Shown here one piece after another: positions 5,923 to 29,003 of a stretch of DNA of 64,000 nt. The notes beneath the pieces are model-generated. The model was not told where the DNA came from. It searched no databases and was given only the letters and a program-made list of their open reading frames with translations. The stretch is from Polymyxa betae A26-41 (lineage: Eukaryota; Protista; Endomyxa: Phytomyxea), in NCBI GenBank assembly GCA_003693705.1, contig RBZT01000259.1, forward strand, positions 1 to 64,000, written 5' to 3'. Within the stretch, counting starts at the first letter, position 1. Each line of letters opens with the position of its first letter. Position numbers and translations under genes: made by a program.

Positions 5923-6017
5923 TAAGTGTTAAAGGTTCTCAAGTTCGACGCGAATAGATACGTTAAGGAAATGGATGTTCAGGAGTCACGGTCGGTGGAC
6001 AGTACGTCCATCAAGTG

Positions 6018-6024
6018 TGACTCA
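6018..6024. promoter_or_regulatory. TGACTCA (AP-1/GCN4-like) element upstream of His-rich gene C
   Basis: About 96 bp upstream of ATG 5922. A near-match GGAGTCA lies at 5982. Confidence 0.5.
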
Positions 6025-6051
6025 ACGAAACAGTGAACATATAAGTCAAGG

Positions 6052-7400
6052 TTAGTTTACTTGCAATGACTTAGCTTGTGTTTTCTGATCGTAATACGAG
6101 CGGGCAGCACGAGATAAGTAGACGGATCCAGCGCCTGCGACCATTGCTGACGAAAACAACCAAAATGATGCCGATCCGGATGAGAGCCCAACCACGGCCG
6201 ACACAGGCGTCAGACCAGTTAATCCCAATCCTGAGCAATTAGTTAAAATGCTATTCTTACACAGCCAAGCGAGATTGAAAATTACCTAGACCGCATAATG
6301 AGGATCCTATCACTGTCCTCGAAGTTGATGGCAACGTTGTCGGGTTAACCGCTGGTACTCCTGCCAGGTTGTTTAGAATCCTGTTTAGCACCATTGTGGT
6401 TCCGATGCCCTAAATACGACATTGTATTAGAAGATACGCGTGAAATTTTACAGCAATAAAATGTGGAAATCAGAAATAAGTTCGTGATTTGCTGGCTCTC
6501 ACAAACCATTATTAGAGCTGGACTAGCATTGGCTGATATGGACAAAGTGGAGAGGATCTGATCTGCATTACACCTGTGCAACATAACTCAGAATAAGGTA
6601 CTTAATATGTGAATGCAGATGGTTTACAAGTTTAGACAGCCCACACCAAGCCCTATCCCGATCCCAGTGCCGAATGCGGCGCCAACAGGTTTGACAGATT
6701 GCTTGGCCACGATCTGATTTTTTAAGGCGACGAACGCAAGGCCGGCGGCTGTGAATGCCACCATCGACGGACCATCATAAATCGTCACCGCATCGAAACC
6801 TTATCAGCATCTTAGATCGAAAACAGAACAATGCGAAACTTTGAAAGACAAATAGAGAACGAATACGCTTACTGTGTACGGCGGCAGCTGAATCTAAATA
6901 CAGGTACTTAGAGAGCATATTTTGACCGATTACGGCCGTTGCCATGGCTGTCGTCAACGCTGTAAACGAAGGCAAGGCAGCTGCCCGACACGATAAGCCA
7001 TGTGATAGGAAGCTGCCTCGAGCCAGCTGTGAACCCAATCCCACCTTGATGGTGTTTAGTTCAAACCGACAAGCCAGCTGACGACACGAACCAGGAATCC
7101 ACCGGCAATCAGAACTTCACCGAATGGGTGTAGACTTCCTGATAATGCTAATCCAACCTGACCGAACTGTGATTCAGCTAGAGACAGCCCCGAAAATAAA
7201 AGACCAGAGGCAAACGCAGCGTTTCTTGTCGCTGTAGGGATGGGCGTCGGAGTCGTCGTCTCATCAGGGTTGACGAAGAGCAATTTCAAGGCGGTCCATG
7301 TCGATGGTGCTTTCTTGAAATAACGAAGATGAGCGTACGACGAAGCCGATAGCGATGCTGCCCCTGCTAGGGTTGTCGCTATCGCCGTCAATGACGACAT
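6052..7400 (-). CDS. YeeE/YedE (PmpA-PmpB fused type) sulfur-compound transporter-like membrane protein, divergent
   Basis: Multi-exon and hydrophobic. LIAGGFLVGLGSQLARGSFLSHG resembles the family GLLVGFGTRLGxGCTSGHG motif; FGTGIGIGLGVGCLNLCNADQIL resembles LFGLGLGISGMxxPxKVL; VIGSSLCGLGLGLTGLTPVSAVV resembles GAALFGVGWGLxGxCPGPA. Confidence 0.7.
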
Positions 7401-7552
7401 TACCATTATAATCCGTCGTCTCGCACTCGATACCACGGTAAGGCAGACACGCAGGCCATTTTCAATGTTAACGTTTATTGATGAAATTGCAAACGTTTTT
7501 TGACTAATAAAAATGAGCGCTGAAGGAGCGATGTTACCGCCAAGGTCGGATG

Positions 7553-7583
7553 TGACTCAATCTAATCATCTGTTAATGAGTCA
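7553..7583. promoter_or_regulatory. Paired TGACTCA/TGAGTCA elements upstream of His-rich gene D
   Basis: TGACTCA at 7553-7559 and TGAGTCA at 7577-7583, about 123 and 99 bp before ATG 7676. Confidence 0.55.
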
Positions 7584-26831: not shown

Positions 26832-28187
26832 TTATATTAATATGGTGATTAAGTCACTCTGTATTGGTTCAGAAGCAGTTCGCCTGCGCTTTGCCAACAT
26901 TTCGTCATCTAGGGTGTCATGATTGAGTTCGGCATTGGTGGCATTCAAAAATTTGACATTTCCTCCGAAAACGAATGACTTGTTATCGATGAACTTGGGC
27001 ATTGATCCATCCGGCAACAACCCAATCGGAATGCGCCTGCCGTGAGTAAACGCAGGCGTCCACCGATTCCTTACCGAGTCGTCATTTTCCACTTCATTTA
27101 CGAATTTCTCGATCCGATTCAGGTCTCCCAAACGACTTCCAAATCCAGGTTCGAGAAACGCAGACAACAACGATGATCCTTGCATGGCTTGATCGCCGAC
27201 CGAATACAACGCTCTCGAGGATGACATATTGGAACAGTATTCTTCAAAAGCACCGATTGTCAATGAACTTCTGGTCCGTAGGCACAAATCGATAACAGAC
27301 GATTGTGGAAGAGAGCAACGAGGAAGGCAGTAGGATAGCCATCGGCCAGCCAGAACTTGACGCCATTTACAGTCATTACGAGAGGTCTGAAACAGGCGCA
27401 GAACTATTGCCGACATAAGTTCAGGAAGGCGAGCTGCTAGATACGATAGAATATCGCTCCAGAGACTGGATAGCAAACCGAATGCAGAGTTAATATTGGC
27501 GACGGTCGGCTCGATACCAGATCGTGGTTGTCGTAGCAGGATATCGTTACCGGAAAACATATCGACGATGTCACTAATCCGGCATTGCTTGAAAATTAAT
27601 TCGAGAACCGATTCGAGCTTGCGATCGAATTCGTCTTGTTCGAGCTTTCGCCAGGATTTAGCTGCAGTCTGCAGGGCGGTGAATAAGTCGACAAAAGGTC
27701 GCGGTGCGGATTGCAGGTGTGATCGATATTGTTGCCAGTAGTGGTCATGGAGCCAATTTAGAGCACGTTGTCGGGTATCGAGTAATAGCTGTAATGAAGG
27801 CAGTTCGTTGTGTGTGGCGGCGTGACGGATCTCGACGAACGACAGTGGCATCTGCAGCGTGCGAGCGATTTCTCGAATCGACTTCGCATAAATCGAGTTT
27901 TGTTCACGATCGGCGATACCGTTTACTAAACGGACAATGATCATGGCGATCGCCAAACGAACTTCCGCCTTCGAAAGACGGTCGGCATCCACAATAGTTT
28001 CTAACAAAGCCGCTGTGATATCAACGGAAATCGGTAATGGACAACGTAATTGCCATGAACGGATAGTATCAATGGCAAATTTTGGCGAGCCGTGATAGGC
28101 GCTGAAATAAACGCGATCCCATTCGTCAAAGGATATCCATGGGACCAAGCGATGGCGCTGTATTGAACCAGGTAATGTCCACTCCAT
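26832..28187 (-). CDS. LAS1: Las1-like pre-rRNA HEPN endoribonuclease
   Basis: VPWISFDEWDRV, AMIIVRLVNGIAD, and the HEPN motif in IRHAATHNELPSL. Intronless. Confidence 0.9.
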   Translation of the reverse strand: MEWTLPGSIQRHRLVPWISFDEWDRVYFSAYHGSPKFAIDTIRSWQLRCPLPISVDITAALLETIVDADRLSKAEVRLAIAMIIVRLVNGIADREQNSIYAKSIREIARTLQMPLSFVEIRHAATHNELPSLQLLLDTRQRALNWLHDHYWQQYRSHLQSAPRPFVDLFTALQTAAKSWRKLEQDEFDRKLESVLELIFKQCRISDIVDMFSGNDILLRQPRSGIEPTVANINSAFGLLSSLWSDILSYLAARLPELMSAIVLRLFQTSRNDCKWRQVLAGRWLSYCLPRCSLPQSSVIDLCLRTRSSLTIGAFEEYCSNMSSSRALYSVGDQAMQGSSLLSAFLEPGFGSRLGDLNRIEKFVNEVENDDSVRNRWTPAFTHGRRIPIGLLPDGSMPKFIDNKSFVFGGNVKFLNATNAELNHDTLDDEMLAKRRRTASEPIQSDLITILI

Positions 28188-28453
28188 CACAGATCTAAAA
28201 CTGCATGCTTTGGTTAGGTCAAGGACTCCGTCGCGGCATTCTAACAAATTCCAATTCTGGAGTTTTCAGGCTAAGCTTCCCATCTCCTCAATACCATTAT
28301 CCAGGAAATATTGATATTGGTTTGATTCAACTTCGCTTGTTTGAACTTTGCTAAATCGGATCATGAAGGTGATCCGGTTTTCTACTTTCTACAAGAAGGG
28401 ATTCACGAAATGATGTTCTCAAAGGTTTATTCGAAAGAGACTTCAGCCGTCGC

Positions 28454-28837
28454 TTAGTGATGGCCATGATCGAATGGAGTTTCGAAGTCGCCATGGTGTC
28501 CGTCGTGGCCTTCGTGATGGCCTTCATGGTGATGCCATCCATCGTGCTCATCTTCACCATCATAAGTCTCGTGGAACAGGTTCTCGTGCTGTCCGAGACC
28601 GACATCGTTGTGGTGCCAGTCACCAAATTCGGTTTCGGCGTGCTGCTCTGATAGAGCATGGCCGGTGTGGATCTTGTCGTGGTGAAGGCGGGCCAGATCG
28701 GCGATACCGCCGTGGGCGCCAACTAGCTTGTTGTCAACGTGACCATCTCCATTTTCAACGTTGATAGCTGCGTCACCAGCTAGGGCTTGGTAGGAGGACA
28801 GGGCGACGGCAGCAAGGACGAAGAATTTTGACATCAT
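28454..28837 (-). CDS. Secreted His-rich protein F (GDGHVD family), intronless
   Basis: MMSKFFVLAAVALSSYQALAGDAAINVENGDGHVDNK...HHHEGHHEGHDGHH. Confidence 0.85.
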   Translation of the reverse strand: MMSKFFVLAAVALSSYQALAGDAAINVENGDGHVDNKLVGAHGGIADLARLHHDKIHTGHALSEQHAETEFGDWHHNDVGLGQHENLFHETYDGEDEHDGWHHHEGHHEGHDGHHGDFETPFDHGHH

Positions 28838-28983
28838 TGTCTTTGATAGAATTCAGTAAACCTTTGGTAATAAAAGCAGGGGATTCTGAGTTGCTAATTT
28901 AGCTTTCAATATAAGAATGACAAGGACCTACAGCCAGCTACGTTTAATATTCGTGATGAACCGATGGCCTGTGCCCTCGCGGT

Positions 28984-29003
28984 TGATTCACGCTCATGAC
29001 TCA
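28984..29003. promoter_or_regulatory. TGATTCA + TGACTCA elements upstream of His-rich gene F
   Basis: TGACTCA at 28997-29003 and the variant TGATTCA at 28984-90, about 150-165 bp upstream of the ATG. Confidence 0.45.

What the first reader, a model, noticed from the sequence alone, without database searches (positions are those of the whole stretch)
5982..29003. Shared AP-1/GCN4-type TGA(C/G)TCA promoter element suggests a secreted-protein regulon
Seen: eight perfect TGASTCA sites lie 60-165 bp upstream of five secreted genes: 6018 (gene C); 7553 and 7577 (D); 17939 and 17957 (E); 21368 and 21395 (mucin-like gene); 28997 (F). They often come as pairs 18-27 bp apart. The shared A/B promoter has only variants (TGAATCA 4495, TGACACA 4531). 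A rough expectation at about 44% GC is 1.3e-4 per bp, or about 0.13 sites in 1 kb of such promoters. I did not notice the motif before the housekeeping genes, though I did not count exhaustively. Established: TGASTCA is the Jun/Fos/GCN4 bZIP site. Inference: one bZIP factor switches on a wall or matrix gene battery at a specific life stage.
Basis: partly seen in the sequence, partly recalled or inferred. Interest (0 to 1): 0.8.

Follow-up and report, generated by a model that had tools for sequence, protein, structure and literature searches.

The report
Shared promoter word of secreted-protein genes
In the sugar-beet root parasite Polymyxa betae, the classic bZIP docking word TGA(C/G)TCA sits, usually in pairs, about 20-160 bases upstream of genes for secreted and cell-wall proteins. 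This points to one shared transcriptional switch for part of the parasite's secretome, though no binding or expression data could be checked.

Summary
The window holds exactly eight TGASTCA sites. All lie 56-160 bp upstream of the start codons of five signal-peptide genes, and three promoters carry pairs 18-27 bp apart. The total count is not above chance (8 against about 12.7 in shuffles); the placement is what is unusual.

Genome-wide, single sites barely exceed a reversed-word control (2475 against 2015). Pairs 5-40 bp apart number 106, against 3 for the control and about 8 expected. About 44 pairs come from repeats, mainly an LTR retrotransposon, which leaves roughly 60 distinct loci.

Of 23 such loci read outside the window, 14 lie 15-200 bp upstream of a signal-peptide-like ORF, against 6% of background positions (P about 4e-12). 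The downstream genes encode Kazal, CAP, lectin, PAN and chitin-binding proteins, a chitin synthase and His-rich proteins.

The genome matches the Polymyxa betae draft. It encodes at least four bZIPs, one with the canonical N-x2-AA-x2-SR basic-region signature.

Which factor binds, whether the genes are co-expressed and at what life stage all remain untested. This scan found the same motif earlier on other pieces of this genome (s1-673882, s1-693165). I found no paper describing it in plasmodiophorids.

The parts
6018..6024 (.). TGACTCA site, 95 bp upstream of the ATG of gene C. One-mismatch copies lie at 5982-5988 (GGAGTCA) and 6042-6048 (TAAGTCA).
7553..7583 (.). Pair TGACTCA (7553) and TGAGTCA (7577), 116 and 92 bp upstream of the ATG of gene D. 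It lies in the divergent intergenic region shared with the YeeE-like transporter gene.
17939..17963 (.). Pair TGACTCA (17939) and TGAGTCA (17957), 114 and 96 bp upstream of the ATG of gene E. The TGA of the first site is the stop codon of the upstream DUF72 gene's last ORF.
21368..21401 (.). Pair TGAGTCA (21368) and TGAGTCA (21395), 83 and 56 bp upstream of the ATG of the mucin-like gene.
28984..29030 (.). TGACTCA at 28997, 159 bp upstream of the ATG of gene F, flanked by two TGAATCA variants at 28984 and 29024.
5533..5922 (-). Gene C: intronless secreted His-rich protein (129 aa, 21% His) with the conserved N-terminal GDGH(I/V)DN motif.
7676..8257 (+). Gene D: secreted His/Asp-rich protein (193-aa ORF). 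It has a paralogue on contig C479 (L021) that also carries three sites.
18060..18647 (+). Gene E: secreted protein of 195 aa with 28% His, including DYGHH repeats.
21458..22511 (+). Mucin-like secreted gene: a signal-peptide first exon of 52 codons, a short intron, then a Ser/Thr/Pro-rich ORF ending at 22511.
28454..28837 (-). Gene F: secreted His-rich protein (127 aa) of the same family as C, 60% identical to a Spongospora subterranea protein.
4495..4501 (.). TGAATCA variant in the intergenic region shared by the head-to-head His-rich paralogues A (ATG 4356, minus strand) and B (ATG 4634). It is a possible weak site and is not significant on its own.

Best explanation
WTGA(C/G)TCAW is a real promoter-proximal cis-regulatory element of Polymyxa betae. 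It works as homotypic clusters of two or three sites, 12-47 bp apart, in either orientation, about 20-160 bp upstream of the start codon.

It most likely recruits a dimeric bZIP activator. Through it, a battery of genes would be transcribed together. These are mostly secretory-pathway cargo (His-rich proteins, a mucin-like protein, Kazal, CAP, lectin, PAN and chitin-binding proteins) plus wall-building enzymes (a chitin synthase, a GT2 enzyme) and a few transcription factors. In the window it marks genes C, D, E, the mucin-like gene and F.

Shown: the sites, their clustering, their position and their association with signal-peptide genes. Inferred: binding by a bZIP, activation and co-expression at one life stage.
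For: - All eight window sites lie in five signal-peptide-gene promoters.
- Genome-wide there are 106 pairs, against 3 for the reversed-word control and 8.1 expected from 2475 single sites.
- About 60 distinct loci remain after removing repeat copies.
- 14 of 23 unique pair loci outside the window lie 15-200 bp upstream of a signal-peptide-like ORF, against 6% of background positions (P = 4e-12).
- At ORF level the odds ratio is 21 (P = 7e-6).
- Downstream genes form a coherent secreted/wall set.
- Both orientations are used (25 G-centred, 18 C-centred). Flanks are 79% A/T and the median distance to the ATG is 108 bp. This fits recognition of double-stranded DNA by a symmetric dimer.
- Paralogues D and L021 are 34% identical in protein. 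Their promoters are unalignable apart from the motif blocks.
- The F paralogue on the same contig also carries sites.
- The unique promoters show no similarity to the motif-bearing LTR.
- The genome encodes four firm bZIPs. The one on contig C539 reads N-K-E-A-A-L-R-S-R. From my knowledge of the GCN4-DNA structure, this matches GCN4 at the five base-contacting positions.
Against: - Co-expression and stage are therefore untested.
- No cross-species promoter could be read.
- The candidate bZIP's nearest solved relatives are NFIL3 and CREB, with Fos and GCN4 weaker. Its site preference is therefore open.
- Isolated single sites are mostly background, so the single-site promoters of C and F are individually weaker cases.
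- About a third of unique pairs are not in front of a signal-peptide gene.
- Signal peptides were judged with a home-made hydrophobicity rule, not a trained predictor.
Confidence: 0.62

Rival explanations
1. The element is real, but it is read by the HY5/XBP1/Hac1-like bZIP (contig C675) or another non-AP-1 factor. This would couple transcription of secretory cargo genes to ER capacity, as a UPR-type switch, rather than to a developmental AP-1/GCN4-like factor.
For: A bZIP with the basic region N-R-L-S-A-Q-E-S-R followed by KRAYVLELE, resembling HY5/XBP1/Hac1, is encoded in the genome. Most targets are secretory cargo. From my own knowledge, plant bZIPs with the N-x2-SA-x2-SR signature bind GCN4-like motifs in storage-protein promoters, and the Ustilago UPR factor Cib1 controls some effector genes.
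Against: From my own knowledge, known Hac1/XBP1/bZIP60 sites have ACGT or CAGCGTG cores, not TGASTCA. None of the 23 pair loci read was a chaperone or other ER-machinery gene.
Confidence: 0.12
2. The element is a stress or nutrient response site rather than a life-stage switch. Candidates are Yap1/AP-1-type oxidative stress, Gcn4-type amino-acid starvation, or a metal response suggested by the His-rich products.
For: TGASTCA is the Gcn4 and AP-1 site in fungi and animals (established knowledge). Six His-rich, presumably metal-binding, secreted proteins cluster in this window.
Against: Among 28 motif-bearing loci read, none encodes an amino-acid biosynthetic enzyme, an antioxidant enzyme or a metal transporter. 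They encode Kazal, CAP, lectin, PAN and chitin-related proteins, which no metal or starvation response would explain.
Confidence: 0.15
3. There is no function. The window pattern would be chance, or the residue of duplicated promoters or transposon fragments.
For: The window's total count is below the shuffle mean. About 44 of the genome's pairs lie in repeats, mainly an LTR. C, F, A and B are paralogues.
Against: About 60 non-repeat pair loci remain, against about 8 expected and 3 in the control. Spacers between sites are all different. Unique promoters have no LTR similarity. Paralogous promoters share only the motif. The link with signal-peptide ORFs has P about 4e-12.
Confidence: 0.03

Closest known systems
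BIP1 bZIP / TGACTC regulon of Magnaporthe oryzae (PMC10833574)
   Same: A GCN4-like bZIP motif, often in two copies, lies in the promoters of a stage-specific set of genes dominated by small secreted proteins, secreted enzymes and membrane receptors. The factor is a bZIP activator.
   Different: In M. oryzae, binding, deletion and promoter mutation were all done; here nothing is tested. The organism is a rhizarian protist, not a fungus. The core is the full 7-bp palindrome with A/T flanks, and pairing seems to be required.
Gcn4 response element (RTGACTCAY) and AP-1 TRE (TGAGTCA)
   Same: The 7-bp core is identical, works in either orientation and lies close to the promoter. The genome has a bZIP with the same N-AA-SR positions as GCN4.
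   Different: The targets are not amino-acid biosynthetic or stress genes. The flanks are W/W rather than R/Y. The candidate factor cannot be placed in the Gcn4 or Jun/Fos subfamily.
GCN4-like motif of cereal storage-protein promoters, bound by Opaque2-type bZIPs (own knowledge)
   Same: TGA(G/C)TCA in proximal promoters drives a battery of abundant secretory-pathway cargo genes at one developmental stage.
   Different: That is a plant system, where the motif works with a neighbouring prolamin box. No partner motif was found here.
Effector-promoter motifs of plant-parasitic nematodes (DOG box; STATAWAARS, PMC6062891)
   Same: A short promoter word marks genes for secreted proteins of a plant parasite and could be used to predict further ones (listed).
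   Different: The sequences are unrelated and those motifs have no known factor. Here the word is a textbook bZIP site.

Membership tests
AP-1/GCN4-type bZIP response element | 7-bp palindromic core TGA(C/G)TCA | tested here: met
   Eight perfect sites in the window and 43 sites in 22 promoters.
AP-1/GCN4-type bZIP response element | Works in either orientation, upstream of and close to the promoter | tested here: met
   25 G-centred and 18 C-centred sites relative to the gene. Distance to the ATG is 18-159 bp, median 108.
AP-1/GCN4-type bZIP response element | The genome encodes a bZIP with the canonical basic region N-x2-AA-x2-(S/C)R | tested here: met
   The contig C539 bZIP reads N-K-E-A-A-L-R-S-R, with bZIP_1 at 37-38 bits.
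AP-1/GCN4-type bZIP response element | That bZIP belongs to the Jun/Fos or Gcn4 subfamily | tested here: inconclusive
   Nearest solved chains are NFIL3 (E 4e-4) and CREB (E 0.008), then Fos (0.06) and GCN4 (0.1).
AP-1/GCN4-type bZIP response element | The site is physically bound by the factor | not testable with these tools
   Needs EMSA, DAP-seq or a yeast one-hybrid assay.
Regulon (co-regulated gene battery) | Motif over-represented in the promoters of a functionally coherent gene set | tested here: met
   Pairs number 106 against 8 expected. 14 of 23 unique loci precede signal-peptide ORFs against a 6% background.
Regulon (co-regulated gene battery) | Member genes are co-expressed | not testable with these tools
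Gcn4 general amino-acid control | Targets are amino-acid biosynthetic genes | tested here: not met
   None among the 28 motif-bearing loci read.
Hac1/XBP1 unfolded-protein-response element | ACGT- or CAGCGTG-core UPRE in the promoters of ER chaperone and folding genes | tested here: not met
   The core is TGASTCA, and no chaperone or ER-machinery gene is among the loci read. The site definition is from my own knowledge.

The most novel reading that the evidence does not exclude
One bZIP-read word, used in pairs, is the master promoter code for much of the plasmodiophorid secretome and resting-spore or cyst-wall programme. It would be shared with Spongospora and Plasmodiophora, so candidate effectors of these unculturable crop parasites could be predicted from promoters alone. 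A Ty3/gypsy-type retrotransposon would have copied the same code into its LTR to be transcribed at that stage.
Probability: 0.3. Interest if true: 0.72.

Novelty: new member of a known kind. Interest (0 to 1): 0.55.

Why it matters
Plasmodiophorids (Polymyxa, Spongospora, Plasmodiophora) cannot be cultured or transformed. Their gene regulation is essentially unknown and finding their effectors is hard. A promoter word that marks secreted and wall genes would give a first entry into their transcriptional wiring. It would also give a sequence-only way to shortlist stage-specific secreted proteins. And it leaves only a handful of candidate regulators to test in vitro, since the genome has four firm bZIPs.

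The kind of system is well known: a bZIP site driving a secreted-gene battery, as in the Magnaporthe BIP1 regulon. This scan had already reported the motif on other pieces of the same genome.

Tried and rejected
- **RNA evidence.** Co-expression and transcription start sites remain unknown.
- **Cross-species footprinting.**
  - The F family has a Spongospora subterranea homologue known only from a transcript.
  - Logan contigs with homologues of F and of the CAP gene came back without DNA.
  - A metagenome scan with the F-family alignment found nothing.
  - The Spongospora protein is not on record.
  - Gene D has no relatives in the word search.
- **More genome DNA.** Only 23 of about 60 unique pair loci, and no random background sample, could be read. 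Background came from the window and the flanks of the loci.
- **TGAWTCA as an equal variant.** The tool's reversed-word control made S-W and W-W pairs look 24-30 times enriched. That control word is six times rarer than TGAWTCA. Against Poisson expectations the excess is 3.2-fold for S-W and 1.9-fold for W-W, so TGAWTCA is at most a weaker companion site.
- **TATA-like partner.** A/T-rich words are enriched, but their positions are inconsistent.
- **LTR origin of the unique promoters.** Rejected.
- **Literature.** No paper in the library holds both a plasmodiophorid name and TGACTCA. Two other searches found no promoter-motif work on this group.
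Full report
**Observation.**
Reading the DNA and translating downstream ORFs shows that every site lies 56-160 bp upstream of an ATG opening an ORF with a hydrophobic signal-peptide-like N-terminus:
- Gene C: minus strand, ATG 5922.
- Gene D: ATG 7676.
- Gene E: ATG 18060.
- A mucin-like gene: ATG 21458.
- Gene F: minus strand, ATG 28837.

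Three promoters hold pairs 24, 18 and 27 bp apart. The A/B head-to-head promoter has only TGAATCA (4495) and TGACACA (4531).

**Chance.**
The count itself is unremarkable: 8 against a mean of 12.66 in dinucleotide-preserving shuffles. The placement is what is unusual. Under an automated rule (15-200 bp upstream of an ATG-ORF of at least 60 aa with a hydrophobic N-terminus), 6% of background positions qualify and 4 of the 5 window clusters do (P = 6e-5). The fifth, the mucin-like gene, fails only because its first exon has 52 codons. Among first-ATG ORFs of at least 80 aa with a signal-peptide-like start anywhere in the window, the four credible ones (C, D, E, F) all carry the motif. Three of the other five overlap the His-rich genes A, B and E and look spurious; I did not examine the other two.

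**Genome-wide test.**
The window is contig C920 of a 27.09-Mb assembly in 1001 contigs. Single sites number 2475 against 2015 for the reversed word, so most isolated sites are background. Pairs separated by 5-40 bp number 106. The control gives 3 and the Poisson expectation from the single-site density is 8.1.

The class-specific lists show that about 44 pairs belong to repeats:
- About 37 lie in a roughly 250-bp element with TG..CA ends.
- Six lie in a second family.
- Two more are two copies of a third family, counted as one locus.

That leaves roughly 60 distinct loci, still about eight times expectation.

**What lies downstream.**
I could read 23 non-repeat pair loci outside the window. 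Fourteen meet the automated rule (P = 4e-12). By eye, 15 have a clear signal peptide, 3 precede membrane proteins, 1 precedes a His-rich protein without a signal peptide, and 4 have neither. At ORF level, being signal-peptide-like and having two or more sites within 200 bp upstream are associated with an odds ratio of 21 (P = 7e-6).

Pfam names the pair-bearing genes as follows:
- Secreted proteins: Kazal inhibitor, bulb-type lectin, CAP/PR-1, PAN/apple protein and hevein-type chitin-binding protein.
- Wall and membrane enzymes: chitin synthase, GT2 glycosyltransferase and a membrane methyltransferase.
- Transcription factors: a C2H2 zinc-finger protein and a TALE homeobox protein.

One locus (L021) is a paralogue of gene D with 20% histidine and three sites. 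Isolated single sites in the flanks of these loci are mostly not in front of secretory genes, so pairing appears to be the functional signature.

**Anatomy of the element.**
Across 43 sites in 22 promoters, both flanking positions prefer A/T (79%), which gives WTGASTCAW. Both orientations occur (25 and 18). The distance from the proximal end of the site to the ATG runs from 18 to 159 bp, with one outlier and a median of 108. Spacing within pairs is broad (12-47 bp centre to centre) with no obvious phasing. Independence from orientation argues for a symmetric DNA-binding dimer rather than an RNA signal.

**TGAWTCA.**
The tool's control suggested a large excess of mixed and W-W pairs. That control word is six times rarer than TGAWTCA itself, which has 6870 sites. 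Against Poisson expectations, S-W pairs are 146 against 45 and W-W pairs are 121 against 63. After masking perfect sites, TGAATCA is the top 7-mer in motif-bearing promoters (7 of 22 against 1.5 expected). Two copies flank the single perfect site of gene F. TGAWTCA is therefore plausibly a weaker companion site. The lone copy in the A/B promoter is not significant by itself.

**Not duplication, not transposon debris.**
- D and its paralogue share 34% protein identity. Their promoters align only at the motif blocks.
- F and its paralogue 63 kb away both carry sites, at different positions.
- The spacers in all unique pairs differ.
- The repeat that carries three perfect sites lies immediately 3' of integrase and chromodomain-like ORFs in three loci. 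It is therefore the LTR of a Ty3/gypsy-type element.
- BLAST finds no trace of that LTR in the window or the unique promoters.

**Candidate factors.**
HMM searches of the genome give four firm bZIPs and about five weak hits.
- The one on contig C539 has the canonical N-K-E-A-A-L-R-S-R basic region. From my own knowledge of the GCN4-DNA structure, this matches GCN4 at its five base-contacting positions. Its nearest solved relatives are NFIL3 and CREB, then Fos and GCN4, all weakly, so its subfamily and site preference stay open.
- The one on contig C675 resembles HY5/XBP1/Hac1.
- The two on contigs C482 and C19 have Glu in place of the invariant Asn.

**Organism and literature.**
Gene F is 60% identical to a Spongospora subterranea protein. 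The assembly statistics match the Polymyxa betae draft (1,001 contigs, 27,085,946 bp, 45.1% GC; PMC6328671). No paper in the searchable library combines a plasmodiophorid name with TGACTCA, and other searches found no promoter-motif work on this group. The closest precedent is the Magnaporthe oryzae bZIP BIP1. It binds TGACTC motifs in the promoters of about 40 appressorium-specific genes, many of which encode secreted proteins (PMC10833574).

This scan had already flagged the same motif on other pieces of the genome. Two follow-ups reached the same conclusion (s1-673882, s1-693165). My tests were run independently on this window and on loci I fetched myself.

**Mechanism and rivals.**
The best reading is that a bZIP dimer binds clustered WTGASTCAW sites and activates a secretory and wall gene battery. 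The element and its association are shown. Binding, activation and timing are inferred. The rivals are:
- A UPR-type bZIP as the reader of the site.
- A stress, nutrient or metal response. This is disfavoured because no biosynthetic, antioxidant or metal-transport gene is among 28 loci read.
- Chance or repeats, which is effectively excluded.

The life stage cannot be named. Chitin synthase and chitin-binding proteins hint at cyst or resting-spore wall formation, while Kazal, CAP and lectin proteins hint at host interaction.

**What failed.**
RNA runs could not be reached. Homologous contigs came without DNA. The metagenome scan was empty. Signal peptides were judged with a simple hydrophobicity rule.

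**Verdict.**
This is a real, genome-wide promoter element of a known kind in a lineage where no cis-regulatory code has been described. It was already found elsewhere in this genome by the same scan.

Noticed in passing
L003:1370-1614; also L015, L031-L037 (contigs C32, C106, C180, C190, C245, C260, C439, C466 and others): A dispersed element of about 250 bp with TG..CA ends carries three perfect TGASTCA sites plus one TGAATCA. It has at least 15 copies, often at contig ends. In L032, L036 and L037 it follows integrase and chromodomain-like ORFs, so it is the LTR of a Ty3/gypsy-type retrotransposon that seems to use the same promoter word.
   Followed up: partly
L013:1494-1523 (contig C86); copies on C177, C259, C686, C942: A second repeat family of six copies. 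One TGACTCA lies at the centre of a perfect 21-nt palindrome and is followed 9 bp later by a second TGACTCA. No gene was recognised next to it.
   Followed up: partly
L039:1-717 (contig C482) and L042:90-572 (contig C19): Two of the four firm bZIP genes have Glu where the invariant basic-region Asn should be (R-E-R-E-S/A-A-x-R-S-R). They would be expected to read a different DNA word.
   Followed up: no
L041:58-321 (contig C675): A small bZIP whose basic region and zipper start resemble HY5/XBP1/Hac1. It may be the gene that another note of this scan calls IRE1-spliced; I did not verify this.
   Followed up: no
window 17939-17941: The TGA of the first site in the E promoter is also the stop codon of the upstream DUF72 gene's last ORF. 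Only 118 bp separate that stop from the ATG of E, so the whole promoter of E fits in that gap or overlaps the neighbour's 3' end.
   Followed up: partly
window 3783-5922 and 28454-28837; L017:1501-1833: A, B, C, F and a paralogue 63 kb further along the contig form a family of small secreted His-rich proteins. They share the motif AGD..I.VEHGDGH(V/I)DN after the signal peptide. The family also occurs in Spongospora subterranea (60% identity) and has no Pfam family.
   Followed up: partly
L023:1501-1528 and L028:1501-1550: Site pairs also precede a C2H2 zinc-finger gene and a TALE homeobox gene, which hints at a regulatory cascade downstream of the same factor.
   Followed up: no
window 1-2469: The tandem array of Cys-rich secreted proteins at the start of the window has no perfect site, so the word does not mark all secreted genes.
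   Followed up: partly
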